Assembly: GCF_035594765.1 (NCBI RefSeq) | Contig: NC_085841.1 | Location: 353,409,402-353,473,401 of the forward strand | Direction: 5' to 3' | Origin: Anolis carolinensis | Taxonomy: Eukaryota | Length of the DNA: 64,000 nt | Shown: positions 30,201-33,200 of the stretch, one piece after another | Layout: each line of letters begins with the position of its first letter | How positions within the stretch are numbered: position 1 is the first letter of the stretch | Translations under genes and position numbers: made by a program | Notes under the pieces: generated by a model | What the model was told of the DNA's origin: nothing | Database searches by the model: none | The model's input: only the letters and a program-made list of their open reading frames with translations

Positions 30201-33200
30201 GACAAAAAATGTTTTATTTTGCAACACTGGGATTGGAAGGATAGTGAATGAGGGCTAGAAAAGCGCAGACTTGCCGTGTTGGGTTGCAGCAGTTTGTCAA
30301 CAATAAACAATGTAATAAAATCTTGACCTGGTAAGAATGGGATTCTGGTCTGGGTCATCCTACTGTAACTTACATATAACAGACAAGGTGTAAACAGCTG
30401 ACTTCAGAATCACTAACTGAAGATGTATAAAGAACAGGGAAAAAGAGGGAGAAAGTAGATCAGCCTGCTTCAAAAAAAAAAAAAAAAAAAACCTAGCTAC
30501 CCTGGCACATTGAGAAAGCACAGACCTGTAGGTTTCATCAACAAAATGGAAACCATAAGGAGAGGCTGATAAAAGAAAATAATCATCCTGAGATCAATCA
30601 CATTTTATTGATTAGCCCATCGGCCGTATCAAAACATTTAGCACATAGACATACATACAACATACAACCTGCGGTACAAAAGAAGTTAAAATAAACAAGC
30701 TGTTAACAAGATCCCGTTCAGGATTCTGGCCGGCCTTTTTTTTTTTTTTTTTTTTTGACATAGAGATATAATGAAGTTTATTTGCCAAAAAATAAAAAAG
30801 AAACCCAGAACTGAAGTAAAATACATGATTGATGAAAGAAAGAGGGGAGGTCTAGCTACACCCGATTTAAAAGTATACTTTGAGGCGGCAGCACTATTGT
30901 GGGCCAAAGATTGGGCAAAACTTGAAAATAGCAAAATTTTGAATCTGAAGGGAATAGACCTGAGATTAGGGTGGCACTCTTATCTCTGGTATGAAAAAAA
31001 AGAAGATAGAAATTAATTTCATTTTATAAGGACCTCAATTCTTAAGATATGGGAGAAATATATATAAAAAGTTATACGAAAAAACACCATTATGGATATC
31101 ACCATTAGAGGAAAGAAGAAGAATAGGGTGGGAAAATTGGGTTAAATATAAAGATATATTAATAATAAAAATGGGAATTGGGCACTAAAAACACAACCGG
31201 AAATGAATAAATTAGATAAAAAAATTTCCAGGTTTCAATATTATAGCATAAGGAGTAGATCATGATCAGGCTCGGGAGGGAGAGTCTTGCTATAAAGCAA
31301 GATTTGGGCGCATCTTAGCGTTAAAGTCTCCTCCCAAAATGACAGAAGCATTTGAGTTCTGCATTATGCGATCACCAACATACATTTCCAAATCGGATCA
31401 CTGGGCTCTGATTTGTGGTTTCCTCTTCAGCGGGGGGATATATACATTAACTACCAGCAGCGTGGCACATTGAGAAAGCACAGACCTGTAGGTTTCATCA
31501 ACAAAATGGAAACCATAAGGAGAGGCTGATAAAAGAAAATAATCATCCTGAGATGCATTTTGGAAGAAACCTTCAAGCAGTATCTAGAATAGTCAAAATG
31601 TTTTTGTTTGATTTATCTGACTTTGCCATTTCATTTCATATTTGTTAGTTTTGAATTAAAAATAGCTGAAACACATTGAGCTGATCTTCTTTGTGGTGAA
31701 GGAAGCTATCCCTATTATGTCCATGTAATTTCTACCTCTGGTACCAAAGTTTCTGTTAAAGAATAAAGCCTGGGGACACAACTCCTTTCTTAACTGAGGC
31801 GTACTTGTATTCCCTAAACCATGACTTCCTAAGGCATATAATTACAATGTGAAGGAATGTAATTTGGAAAAAAATTCTAAGTCTTTTAAAATTCATAGTA
31901 AAAATTGACCAAGGCCCCTTTCACATTGCCCTATATCCCAGGATCTGATCCCAAATTATCTGCTCATCCCAGATTATATGGCAGTGGAGACTCATATATC
32001 CAATTCAAAGCAGACAAGCTGGGATCCGATCCTGGGCAGTGTACCATACATCCAGCCTAAGCCTGCCTAAACAGAACAATGCAAATTAGTGACCTGTTGT
32101 TATCTAGTAGTTAGTTAGAGACTGTGCCAAGACTGAAACTAAATCATGAAGGGCAACAGGTATTTCAGCAGTTTCTTACAAAACAAAATAATTTTATCTT
32201 AGTGTCACAGTAGATAATTTGTTTTAAGACTAAAGATTTGTTTTCATAGAAATAATTTGTTTTAGGAATGACAGAAGTTAGACATGACTCCCAAGTTTCG
32301 CTTATGATGTGGAAAAAGAATAGCACTTTACCCCCAGCCTTGGCCCTATAGTCTGCGTTTTGCACAAGTCCTTACCCTGCCCTCTTGAATCTAATCAGGC
32401 CCATCATGTCCTGGTTTATTGTTTATTGATGGTGGTTGATACATTGTTATGATGTTTTTACTATGCTGTTTTTAATTATTTTAGTGTAATTGTTTATGTG
32501 TTATTATATTTCTAATTGTGCTTTAGCTTATAATCTTTGTTTATGCTGGGCTTGGTCTGCCCAGAGTCCCTTCAGGGAGATGGTAGCGGGATATAAAAAT
32601 AAAGTTATTATCATTAATATAAAATGGATGACTGAATCTCACATTTCTGCTTTCTTTAAATAAGTCTTGGAAGCAAGGATGGGATACCACAGCCAGAACA
32701 TACAGAGTTTTAATCATCCTGCACCATAGAATCATGAAACACAGAGTTGGAAGAGATCTCACGGCCTTCCAGTCCAACCCCCTGCCAAGAAGCAGGAAAA
32801 GCACATTCAAAGCATGACCCTAACAACTTCCCTGCATGTTTGCCTTAAAATTACTATTTTTAAATTATTAGTTTTATCAACAGGAACAGGCTGATTTAAA
32901 TTATGTTTATATTTTAAATTGTTTTAGAGGGCAAATAGCTTTTAAACTGTTTATTATTGTTTTATTAGTATGTAATTAATTTTATTTAGTGATAATGTAG
33001 AAATAATGCAGTCTGATGCCACTTTAGCTGTACCAACTCAATGCTATAGCATCCTGGAGCTTGTAGTTTGGTAAGACATTAGAATTCTTTGGCAGAGAAG
33101 ACCACAGAACATTTAAAACAACAAATCCTACGATTCCATAGCATTGAACCCTGGAAATTAAAGTGATGTCAAGATGCACTGATTTGTAGTATAGATGCAC

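What the first reader, a model, noticed from the sequence alone, without database searches (positions are those of the whole stretch)
30503..31554. Chimeric 868-bp retro-insertion flanked by identical 92-bp direct repeats
Seen: 30503-30594 and 31463-31554 are identical. Read on the minus strand, the insert has four parts. (i) A LINE AP-endonuclease fragment, [10 protein letters not shown]...*...[10 protein letters not shown] (31460 to about 31300), which the ORF track misses. (ii) About 500 bp of L1-type ORF2 in antisense (plus strand KKKPR...[16 protein letters not shown]). (iii) An internal poly(A) of about 22 nt. (iv) A 140-bp tail ending in hairpin GGCCGATGGGCT, AATAAA and GATT repeats, typical of RTE-X-like 3' ends. 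Established: typical LINE TSDs are 7-20 bp, but some RTE elements make very long ones. Inference: a young, internally deleted RTE-X-type element that captured a piece of another LINE clade, either as a composite family or by template switching. It lies sense to ADSS1 and puts an AATAAA in intron 1.
Basis: partly seen in the sequence, partly recalled or inferred. Interest (0 to 1): 0.7.

Follow-up and report, generated by a model that had tools for sequence, protein, structure and literature searches.

The report
Chimeric retrocopy with 92-bp target duplication
An 868-bp patchwork of three jumping-gene-derived RNA pieces was reverse-transcribed into intron 1 of a lizard adenylosuccinate synthase gene, duplicating 92 bp of host DNA; it is a tidy but not new kind of event.

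Summary
30503-30594 and 31463-31554 are identical 92-mers with sharp edges, and they flank an 868-bp insert. Read on the minus strand, the insert has four parts: a decayed AP-endonuclease-like LINE fragment, about 500 bp of L1 ORF2 (aa ~839-994) in antisense, a pure A21 run, and a 141-nt tail.

Three points are new here:
- The only AATAAA in the antisense-L1 piece lies 20 nt before the A21. The A-run therefore looks like a real poly(A) tail of an antisense-L1 transcript.
- The tail is the true 3' end of a retroposon family with thousands of copies and no poly(A). Many genomic copies stop at 30596-30603.
- Contigs from two other sequencing studies carry the left and right junctions without mismatch, so this is not an artefact of one assembly.

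Best reading: target-primed reverse transcription by a non-L1, tail-recognising LINE. The cDNA was joined at RNA level (template switch) to a polyadenylated RNA, and the two target strands were cut 92 nt apart.

The RTE-X label, the "GATT repeats" and the hairpin were not supported or could not be tested. Whether this is a one-off or a composite family stays open.

The scan has already noted giant duplications (154-307 bp) at other L1 inserts in this genome; those notes are unchecked. This is a known kind of event, of modest interest.

The parts
30503..30594 (.). Left copy of the 92-bp target-site duplication. It abuts the 3' end of the insert, which is read on the minus strand.
   Evidence: Exact identity with 31463-31554. 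An X9 contig covers 30503-30620 without mismatch.
30595..30735 (-). 141-nt 3' tail of a very abundant retroposon family that has no poly(A) end. It contains an AATAAA (plus-strand 30604-30609) and an ACATACA-type variable stretch (30653-30668).
   Evidence: Summed contig depth is about 4,000-5,000 times single-copy depth at 30596-30657 and about 2,000 times at 30658-30719, in four runs. Dozens of contigs stop matching at 30593-30603 and continue into unrelated sequence. TRF results are and the fold result (z 0.04).
30736..30756 (-). Pure A21 on the minus strand, read as the poly(A) tail of the second RNA.
   Evidence: Homopolymer run. On the minus strand it is preceded by AATAAA plus 20 nt.
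30777..30782 (-). AATAAA on the minus strand, 20 nt upstream of the A21. It is the only AATAAA in the 502-nt antisense-L1 piece.
   Evidence: The chance of such a placement is about 0.024, from the window's own AATAAA frequency.
30759..31255 (+). L1-clade ORF2 fragment, equivalent to aa ~839-994 (wrist/C-terminal region). It is sense on the plus strand, so antisense within the insert, and carries stops and frameshifts.
   Evidence: PDB hits are only to human L1 ORF2p aa 844-891. 152 library hits, the best at 58% identity. tblastn E 5e-32 to P0001. P0001 has EN+RT domains and is collinear with human ORF2p. L1-family contigs stop aligning at about 31255-31258.
31256..31292 (.). Junction zone between the L1 piece and the endonuclease-like piece. 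The exact breakpoint is not resolved.
   Evidence: L1 homology ends by about 31250-31258. The EN-like open pieces end at 31269-31293.
31269..31462 (-). 5'-truncated, decayed AP-endonuclease-like LINE fragment ([10 protein letters not shown] ... [10 protein letters not shown]). It has at least two in-frame stops and is probably not from the same L1 lineage.
   Evidence: Pfam Exo_endo_phos E 0.0076 and Exo_endo_phos_2 E 0.044. Atlas neighbours carry PF14529 and PF03372. No match to the EN of P0001, and 17% identity to that of P0007. The Y-to-GD spacing is 38 aa here against 28-29 in the L1 representatives. Depth suggests about 30-150 genomic copies, some of which extend further 5'.
31463..31554 (.). 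Right copy of the 92-bp target-site duplication, in its ancestral context.
   Evidence: An X1 contig covers 31401-31758 without mismatch. A diverged older-repeat paralog at 51585-51720 (minus strand) runs from the 92-mer into the right flank without interruption.

Best explanation
This is a young, 5'-truncated chimeric retrocopy in minus orientation. It was made by target-primed reverse transcription by a non-L1, tail-recognising ('stringent') LINE.

Proposed steps:
1. The plus strand was nicked at GAGAT|GCATT, and its 3' end primed cDNA synthesis on an RNA carrying the abundant 3' tail.
2. After 141 nt, the cDNA continues directly into the poly(A) tail of a second, Pol II-type RNA. That RNA consists of antisense L1 ORF2 sequence, cleaved and polyadenylated 20 nt after a cryptic AATAAA.
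3. After about 500 nt, the cDNA continues into a decayed endonuclease-coding LINE fragment and then stops.
4. The minus strand was cut 92 nt away, and fill-in produced the 92-bp duplication.

The joints are RNA-level. They arose by template switching, either at this event or in an ancestral composite copy that was then mobilised through its tail.

Shown: the anatomy, the exact duplication, the placement of the poly(A) signal, the tail being a true family terminus, and the junctions in other individuals.
Inferred: the order of the steps, the template switch, and the identity of the enzyme.
For: - The 92-mers are exact with sharp borders.
- The insert's 3' end coincides with the position where dozens of other genomic copies of a family with thousands of copies also end, 30593-30603. 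A random DNA segment would not be expected to end there.
- There is no poly(A) at the insert's end, and the nick site is not TTTT/A, which argues against L1 machinery.
- The pure A21 is preceded at 20 nt by the only AATAAA of the antisense-L1 piece; chance is about 0.024.
- Both coding pieces carry stops and frameshifts although the duplication is perfect. The templates were therefore transcripts of already dead copies.
- Junction contigs from two other studies match without mismatch.
- An older-repeat paralog shows the 92-mer running uninterrupted into the right flank.
- Template-switch chimeras of L1, L2, RTEX-2 and AnolisSINE2 with U6 RNA are documented in Anolis (PMC4476161). Bi- and tripartite LINE chimeras inside one duplication are known (PMC2104539). 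Extremely long duplications accompany 5'-truncated L1 insertions in HeLa cells (PMC2912911).
Against: - The tail family and the endonuclease clade could not be named, so the enzyme is inferred only.
- A switch onto an internal site of a third RNA (the EN piece) is less typical than end-to-end jumping. A single rearranged donor transcript would serve equally well.
- One X1 contig (107 nt, depth about five times single copy) crosses the L1/EN joint with 4 mismatches and a 3-nt insertion. This hints that the joint exists in other copies, that is, a pre-formed composite rather than a fresh switch.
- k=31 contigs cannot span the 92-mer, so no single record shows flank, 92-mer, insert, 92-mer and flank together.
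- No empty allele was seen.
Confidence: 0.7

Rival explanations
1. It is a member of a pre-formed composite, non-autonomous family. A source copy already had the endonuclease fragment, antisense L1, A-run and tail. It arose as an internally deleted LINE that captured L1 sequence, or as a truncated tail copy lying downstream of a poly(A) retrocopy and co-transcribed with it. That source is mobilised as a unit through its tail, and this locus is one 5'-truncated copy.
For: - One X1 contig crosses the L1/EN joint with minority variants at about five times single-copy depth.
- The EN and L1 parts have similar summed depth in all four runs.
- Contigs that cover 31013-31016 carry the same in-frame TAA.
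- Non-coding decay does not matter for a non-autonomous element.
Against: - The crossing contig was seen in only one of three runs of the same species label, and it could be a smoothed copy of this very locus.
- About 100 copies is also the normal size of an ordinary Anolis L1 family (PMC3787681), so the depth needs no composite family.
- Nothing shows the A21/tail joint elsewhere; that zone was masked by the read tool.
- No second copy lies in the window.
Confidence: 0.3
2. Two separate insertions. First, a poly(A) retrocopy (endonuclease piece, antisense L1, A21) entered with the 92-bp duplication. Later, a 141-nt truncated copy of the tail family landed, without its own duplication, exactly between the A-run and the left 92-mer.
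For: - A/T runs attract some LINE endonucleases; a T-stretch signature is described for RTE-type elements (PMC13295347).
- Some squamate retroposons show few duplications (PMC7983390).
Against: - It needs base-exact coincidence with the old junction.
- No duplication flanks 30595-30735.
- The first nick site is not an L1-type TTTT/A site, as a poly(A)-primed first step would predict.
Confidence: 0.07
3. A DNA-level event, such as break repair with filler DNA and a local duplication, or an assembly artefact.
For: - The insert is a patchwork in mixed orientations.
- No single read spanning the whole structure was available.
Against: - Junction contigs from independent studies match without mismatch.
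- One end coincides with the canonical terminus of a retroposon family.
- The internal poly(A) has a correctly spaced signal.
Confidence: 0.05
4. A twin-priming (5'-inverted) L1 insertion.
For: Two LINE-coding pieces lie in opposite orientation.
Against: - There is no terminal poly(A) and no TTTT/A site.
- The order is wrong: the sense piece should be the 3' one and should end in the A-tail.
- The endonuclease piece does not match the EN of the L1 representatives.
- An unrelated high-copy tail follows the A-run.
Confidence: 0.02

Closest known systems
U6 snRNA/LINE chimeras in Anolis carolinensis (L1 Acar, L2 Acar, RTEX-2 Acar, AnolisSINE2; Doucet et al. 2015, PMC4476161)
   Same: Same host group. 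The 3' part is a short LINE or SINE 3' end, and the 5' part is a copy of another RNA joined at that RNA's 3' end. Template switching by 'stringent' LINE reverse transcriptases is documented there.
   Different: Here the acceptor is a polyadenylated antisense-L1 transcript rather than U6. A third piece is present, and the duplication is 92 bp.
Bi- and tripartite chimeric retroelements of Magnaporthe grisea (MGL LINE / Mg-SINE / WEIRD; Gogvadze et al. 2007, PMC2104539)
   Same: Copies of different transcripts are fused directly inside one pair of direct repeats, and double template jumps are proposed.
   Different: That case is a fungal LINE with a 14-bp duplication, and all parts share one orientation of their source genes. 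Here one part is antisense to its source element.
L1 insertions with extremely long target-site duplications (HeLa assays of Gilbert et al., as cited in PMC2912911)
   Same: A 5'-truncated insert with a duplication far above the usual 7-20 bp, explained by widely staggered strand breaks.
   Different: Here the priming end is not a poly(A) tail and the nick site is not TTTT/A, so L1 is probably not the enzyme.
Stringent LINE/SINE partner pairs that share a 3' recognition tail (Bov-B/Sauria, L2/AnolisSINE2; PMC13295347, PMC4476161)
   Same: A conserved terminal domain of about 40 nt is shared by thousands of copies, and the copy count rises towards the 3' end.
   Different: The end matches neither the (GCA)n nor the (ACCTTT)n end. 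No microsatellite tail is seen, and the family is unnamed here.

Membership tests
LINE-mediated chimeric retrocopy (template-switch type) | The whole chimera is flanked by one target-site duplication. | tested here: met
   Exact 92-bp repeat with sharp borders.
LINE-mediated chimeric retrocopy (template-switch type) | The 3'-most segment is the genuine 3' end of a LINE or SINE family. | tested here: met
   Copy depth is in the thousands, and many copies end at 30593-30603.
LINE-mediated chimeric retrocopy (template-switch type) | The upstream segment starts at the 3' end of another RNA. | tested here: met
   A pure A21 lies 20 nt after the only AATAAA of that segment.
LINE-mediated chimeric retrocopy (template-switch type) | The joint is unique to this insertion, that is, made during this event. 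| tested here: inconclusive
   One X1 contig crosses the L1/EN joint with variants. The A21/tail zone was masked. No genome search was possible.
RTE / RTE-X clade element | The EN and RT sequences group with the RTE clade. | not testable with these tools
   Only 63 decayed residues of EN are present. There is no repeat library and no non-L1 LINE reference. Pfam and the Atlas indicate only an EN-like fold.
   TRF finds none. The end reads AATAAAATGTGATTG. The flanks of other copies are unrelated to each other, with agreement of 0.4-0.5. Published ends are in PMC13295347.
RTE / RTE-X clade element | The Tn-TA insertion signature: T-run about 10 nt upstream, T at -1, A at +1. | tested here: inconclusive
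   The sense-strand context is GGTTTCTTCCAAAATGC|ATCTC. There are Ts at -10 to -15 and the duplication starts with A, but -1 is C. This is a single case.
Canonical L1 insertion | A terminal poly(A) abuts the duplication, the nick site is TTTT/A, and the duplication is 7-20 bp. | tested here: not met
   The insert ends in the tail without an A-run. The nick site is GAGAT|GCATT. The duplication is 92 bp.
L1 clade (internal fragment only) | ORF2 homology collinear with L1 ORF2p. | tested here: met
Twin-priming 5'-inverted L1 | A sense 3' segment that ends in poly(A), plus an inverted upstream segment of the same L1. | tested here: not met
   The order and orientation do not fit. The EN piece is unlike the EN of the L1 representatives.

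The most novel reading that the evidence does not exclude
The insert is one copy of an actively amplifying composite, non-autonomous element in anoles (LINE head, captured antisense-L1 transcript with its poly(A), and the stringent tail). In addition, the giant duplications (92-307 bp) that the scan keeps finding in this genome would reflect a lineage-specific habit of anole LINE machineries of cutting the second strand 100-300 nt away, possibly steered by nearby A/T runs. Here the second cut lies 11 nt from a pure A20 tract.
Probability: 0.15. Interest if true: 0.55.

Novelty: new member of a known kind. Interest (0 to 1): 0.3.

Why it matters
It is a clean natural record of LINE reverse transcriptase joining unrelated RNAs. 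The internal poly(A), with its own correctly spaced signal, marks the joint as RNA-level, and the perfect 92-bp duplication marks it as a single integration event.

It extends the Anolis catalogue of template-switch chimeras from U6 snRNA to a polyadenylated antisense-L1 transcript. It also adds one data point to what may be an unusual abundance of very long target duplications in this genome.

For the host gene, it places two sense-oriented AATAAA signals in intron 1. This could be checked for premature polyadenylation. No functional effect is shown.

Tried and rejected
Routes that gave nothing:
- Protein-collection look-ups of ORFs spanning the joints found nothing. The word search gave no candidate, and the exact look-up of seven junction ORFs found none in the collection. 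These blanks are uninformative.
- A metagenome scan for a 21-nt tail motif gave 0 hits.
- Full-text and supplement searches for tail motifs gave 0 hits.
- Rfam gave only chance-level hits.
- The search of earlier findings by sequence was blank.
- The PDB search with the 35-aa EN piece gave only a spurious repeat-protein hit.

Ideas considered and rejected:
- Squam3, Sauria and Bov-B identity of the tail were considered from the papers. They do not fit by their 3' ends or copy number (PMC7983390, PMC13295347).
- SINE head: no A or B box was visible, by eye only.
- DNA-transposon or Helitron end: there is no inverted copy at the other end of the insert.
- Twin priming was rejected on order, orientation and EN dissimilarity.

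Limits of the read evidence:
- The read tool gave contigs only (k=31). They cannot bridge 92 bp, cannot show an empty allele, and drop rare variants.
- The presence of the insert in the second species label (X10) could not be decided.

For the record:
- The EN fragment was read through its stops only with X, and only in a local script.
- The N run at 40603-40735 was left alone.

Full report
**Observation**

The window holds two identical 92-mers at 30503-30594 and 31463-31554. The bases just outside differ on both sides. No other exact long direct repeat exists in the 64 kb. The 868 bp between them have no second copy in the window.

**Anatomy, read on the minus strand**

1. Endonuclease-like fragment, 31462 to about 31269.
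   - The open pieces read [20 protein letters not shown] / [35 protein letters not shown] / QDSPSRA and are separated by stops.
   - Pfam gives Exo_endo_phos E 0.0076 and Exo_endo_phos_2 E 0.044, both under the curated cut-offs. Atlas neighbours carry the same families.
   - I read it as a decayed AP-endonuclease fragment of a LINE, with about 80% confidence.
   - It does not match the EN domain of the L1 representatives found for the next piece. There is no hit to P0001 and 17% identity to P0007. The distance from the Y of the YxPx motif to GD is 38 residues, against 28-29 in those L1 proteins. It is therefore probably from another lineage. Its clade could not be determined.

2. L1 ORF2 fragment, 31255 to 30759, antisense within the insert.
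   - On the plus strand it reads as L1 ORF2.
   - The PDB search returns only human L1 ORF2p, aa 844-891.
   - The library search gives 152 hits, the best at 58% identity.
   - tblastn aligns 30765-31226 to aa 839-994 of P0001 at E 5e-32.
   - P0001 has EN and RT domains and is collinear with human ORF2p residues 12-930 at E 4e-154.
   - The piece carries in-frame stops and frameshifts.

3. A pure A21 run, 30756 to 30736.

4. A 141-nt tail, 30735 to 30595.

**The internal A-run is a real poly(A) tail**

On the minus strand the sequence before the run is GGCAAATAAACTTCATTATATCTCTATGTC. The AATAAA (plus-strand 30777-30782) lies 20 nt before the run. It is the only AATAAA in the 502-nt antisense-L1 piece. 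From the window's own AATAAA frequency, the chance of such a placement is about 0.024. L1 coding homology starts right after the run, so the run is not part of L1. The simplest reading is that an RNA containing antisense L1 sequence was cleaved and polyadenylated at a cryptic signal, and that RNA, with its tail, was reverse-transcribed.

**The tail is a true retroposon terminus**

I laid contigs of four runs on 30100-31950.
- Summed depth at 30596-30657 is about 57,000, 20,000, 95,000 and 156,000 in the four runs. Single-copy depth in the same runs is about 10, 5, 25 and 38. That amounts to several thousand copies.
- At 30658-30719 the depth is about a third of that.
- Across the L1 and EN parts it corresponds to only about 30-150 copies.
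- Dozens of contigs per run stop matching at 30593-30603 and continue into sequences unrelated to one another (agreement 0.4-0.5).

So the end of the insert coincides with the canonical 3' end of an abundant family. That family ends around ...GGGCTAATCAATAAAA, with no poly(A) and no shared microsatellite.

TRF finds no GATT repeat, and the fold energy equals that of shuffles (z 0.04). The end fits neither the Anolis Bov-B (GCA)n end nor the Sauria SINE (ACCTTT)n end (PMC13295347). Squam3 is old and rare in Anolis (PMC7983390). I could not name the family. No repeat library was available, and motif searches in metagenomes and in papers were blank.

**Is it real?**

- An X1 contig (2017 study) covers 31401-31758 without mismatch: 62 nt of insert, the whole right 92-mer and 204 nt of flank.
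- An X9 contig (2022 study) covers 30503-30620 without mismatch: the whole left 92-mer and 26 nt of tail. This is below the tool's 31-nt bridging rule. Its first 27 letters fall in the A-run zone that the tool masks.
- Together these two contigs require a 92-mer on each side of the insert.
- Independently, a diverged paralog of an older repeat at 51585-51720 (minus strand) aligns through most of the 92-mer straight into the right flank. This serves as a proxy for the uninterrupted state.
- k=31 contigs cannot bridge 92 bp, and they cannot reveal an empty allele, because both of its junctions also occur in the filled allele. Polymorphism and presence in the second species label (X10) therefore remain undecided.

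**Mechanism**

- The priming strand is the plus strand, nicked at GAGAT|GCATT. This is not an L1 TTTT/A site, and no A-run abuts the duplication. L1 is unlikely to be the enzyme.
- The coincidence with a family terminus argues for target-primed reverse transcription by a LINE that recognises that tail.
- The cDNA passes from the tail into the poly(A) end of a second RNA. That is the pattern of end-to-end template switching.
- Template switching is documented in Anolis for L1, L2 and RTEX-2 LINEs and for AnolisSINE2 with U6 RNA (PMC4476161). In other organisms it is documented for bi- and tripartite chimeras inside one duplication (PMC2104539).
- The third piece (EN) may come from a second switch, or from a donor transcript of a rearranged locus.
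- Both coding pieces are decayed while the duplication is perfect, so the templates were transcripts of dead copies.
- The second-strand cut lies 92 nt away, at CCTAGCTACCC|TGGCAC on the plus strand. Very long duplications are a known, rare outcome with 5'-truncated L1 in cell culture (PMC2912911).
- The scan's unchecked notes list 154-307-bp duplications at other L1 inserts of this genome.

**One-off or family?**

One X1 contig (107 nt, depth about five times single copy) crosses the L1/EN joint (31215-31318) with four mismatches and a 3-nt insertion. That hints that the joint exists in other copies. However, it was seen in only one run, and it may be a smoothed version of this locus. The similar depth of the EN and L1 parts is compatible with a composite family, but also with ordinary Anolis L1 family sizes of 75-144 copies (PMC3787681). 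The A21/tail joint lies in a zone the tool masks. I leave this question open, at about 30% for a pre-formed composite.

**Context**

Adenylosuccinate synthase exons lie on the minus strand. Their open frames are at 38298-38621, 24466-24684 and 18593-18904, matching profile positions 3-34, 33-70 and 124-168. The insert therefore sits in intron 1, in sense orientation, and brings two sense AATAAA signals. ADSS1 versus ADSS2 was not tested, and no expression data were examined.

**Limits**

- The caps on runs, read laying and the big protein search were reached.
- The EN fragment was read through stops only with X, in a local script.

**Verdict**

This is a new example of a known kind of event, a LINE-made chimeric retrocopy with an unusually long but not unprecedented duplication.

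Noticed in passing
window 30472-30491: A pure A20 tract lies in otherwise single-copy sequence, 11 bp upstream of the left 92-mer. The second-strand cut of the insertion therefore lies about one helical turn from an A/T run. 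The first cut also has a T-rich stretch 10-15 nt away on the sense strand.
   Followed up: partly
window 31504-31589 and 51596-51681 (minus strand): The target site lies inside an older interspersed repeat. A 79%-identical paralog elsewhere in the window runs from the 92-mer into the right flank without interruption.
   Followed up: yes
window 31898-32036: A second extremely abundant repeat starts at about 31912, with summed contig depth of 16,000-230,000. It overlaps an inverted repeat with 28-nt arms (31937-31964 / 32009-32036, 86% complementary), which looks MITE-like.
   Followed up: no
window 37372-38229: An array of diverged units of about 55-70 nt and 125 nt shares the motif GGATGCCAACTTTT. 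It lies in intron 1, just downstream of the first coding exon of the adenylosuccinate synthase gene (minus strand).
   Followed up: no
window 18593-24684: Profile positions about 70-124 of adenylosuccinate synthase are missing between the exon pieces found at 24.5 kb and 18.8 kb. At least one further exon should lie between them; it was not located.
   Followed up: no
window 31712-31773: A short stretch of the right flank is moderately repeated, at about 50 times single-copy depth. Several contigs join it to 31570-31581, skipping about 145-160 nt. This suggests that the flank carries an old insertion relative to its paralogs.
   Followed up: no
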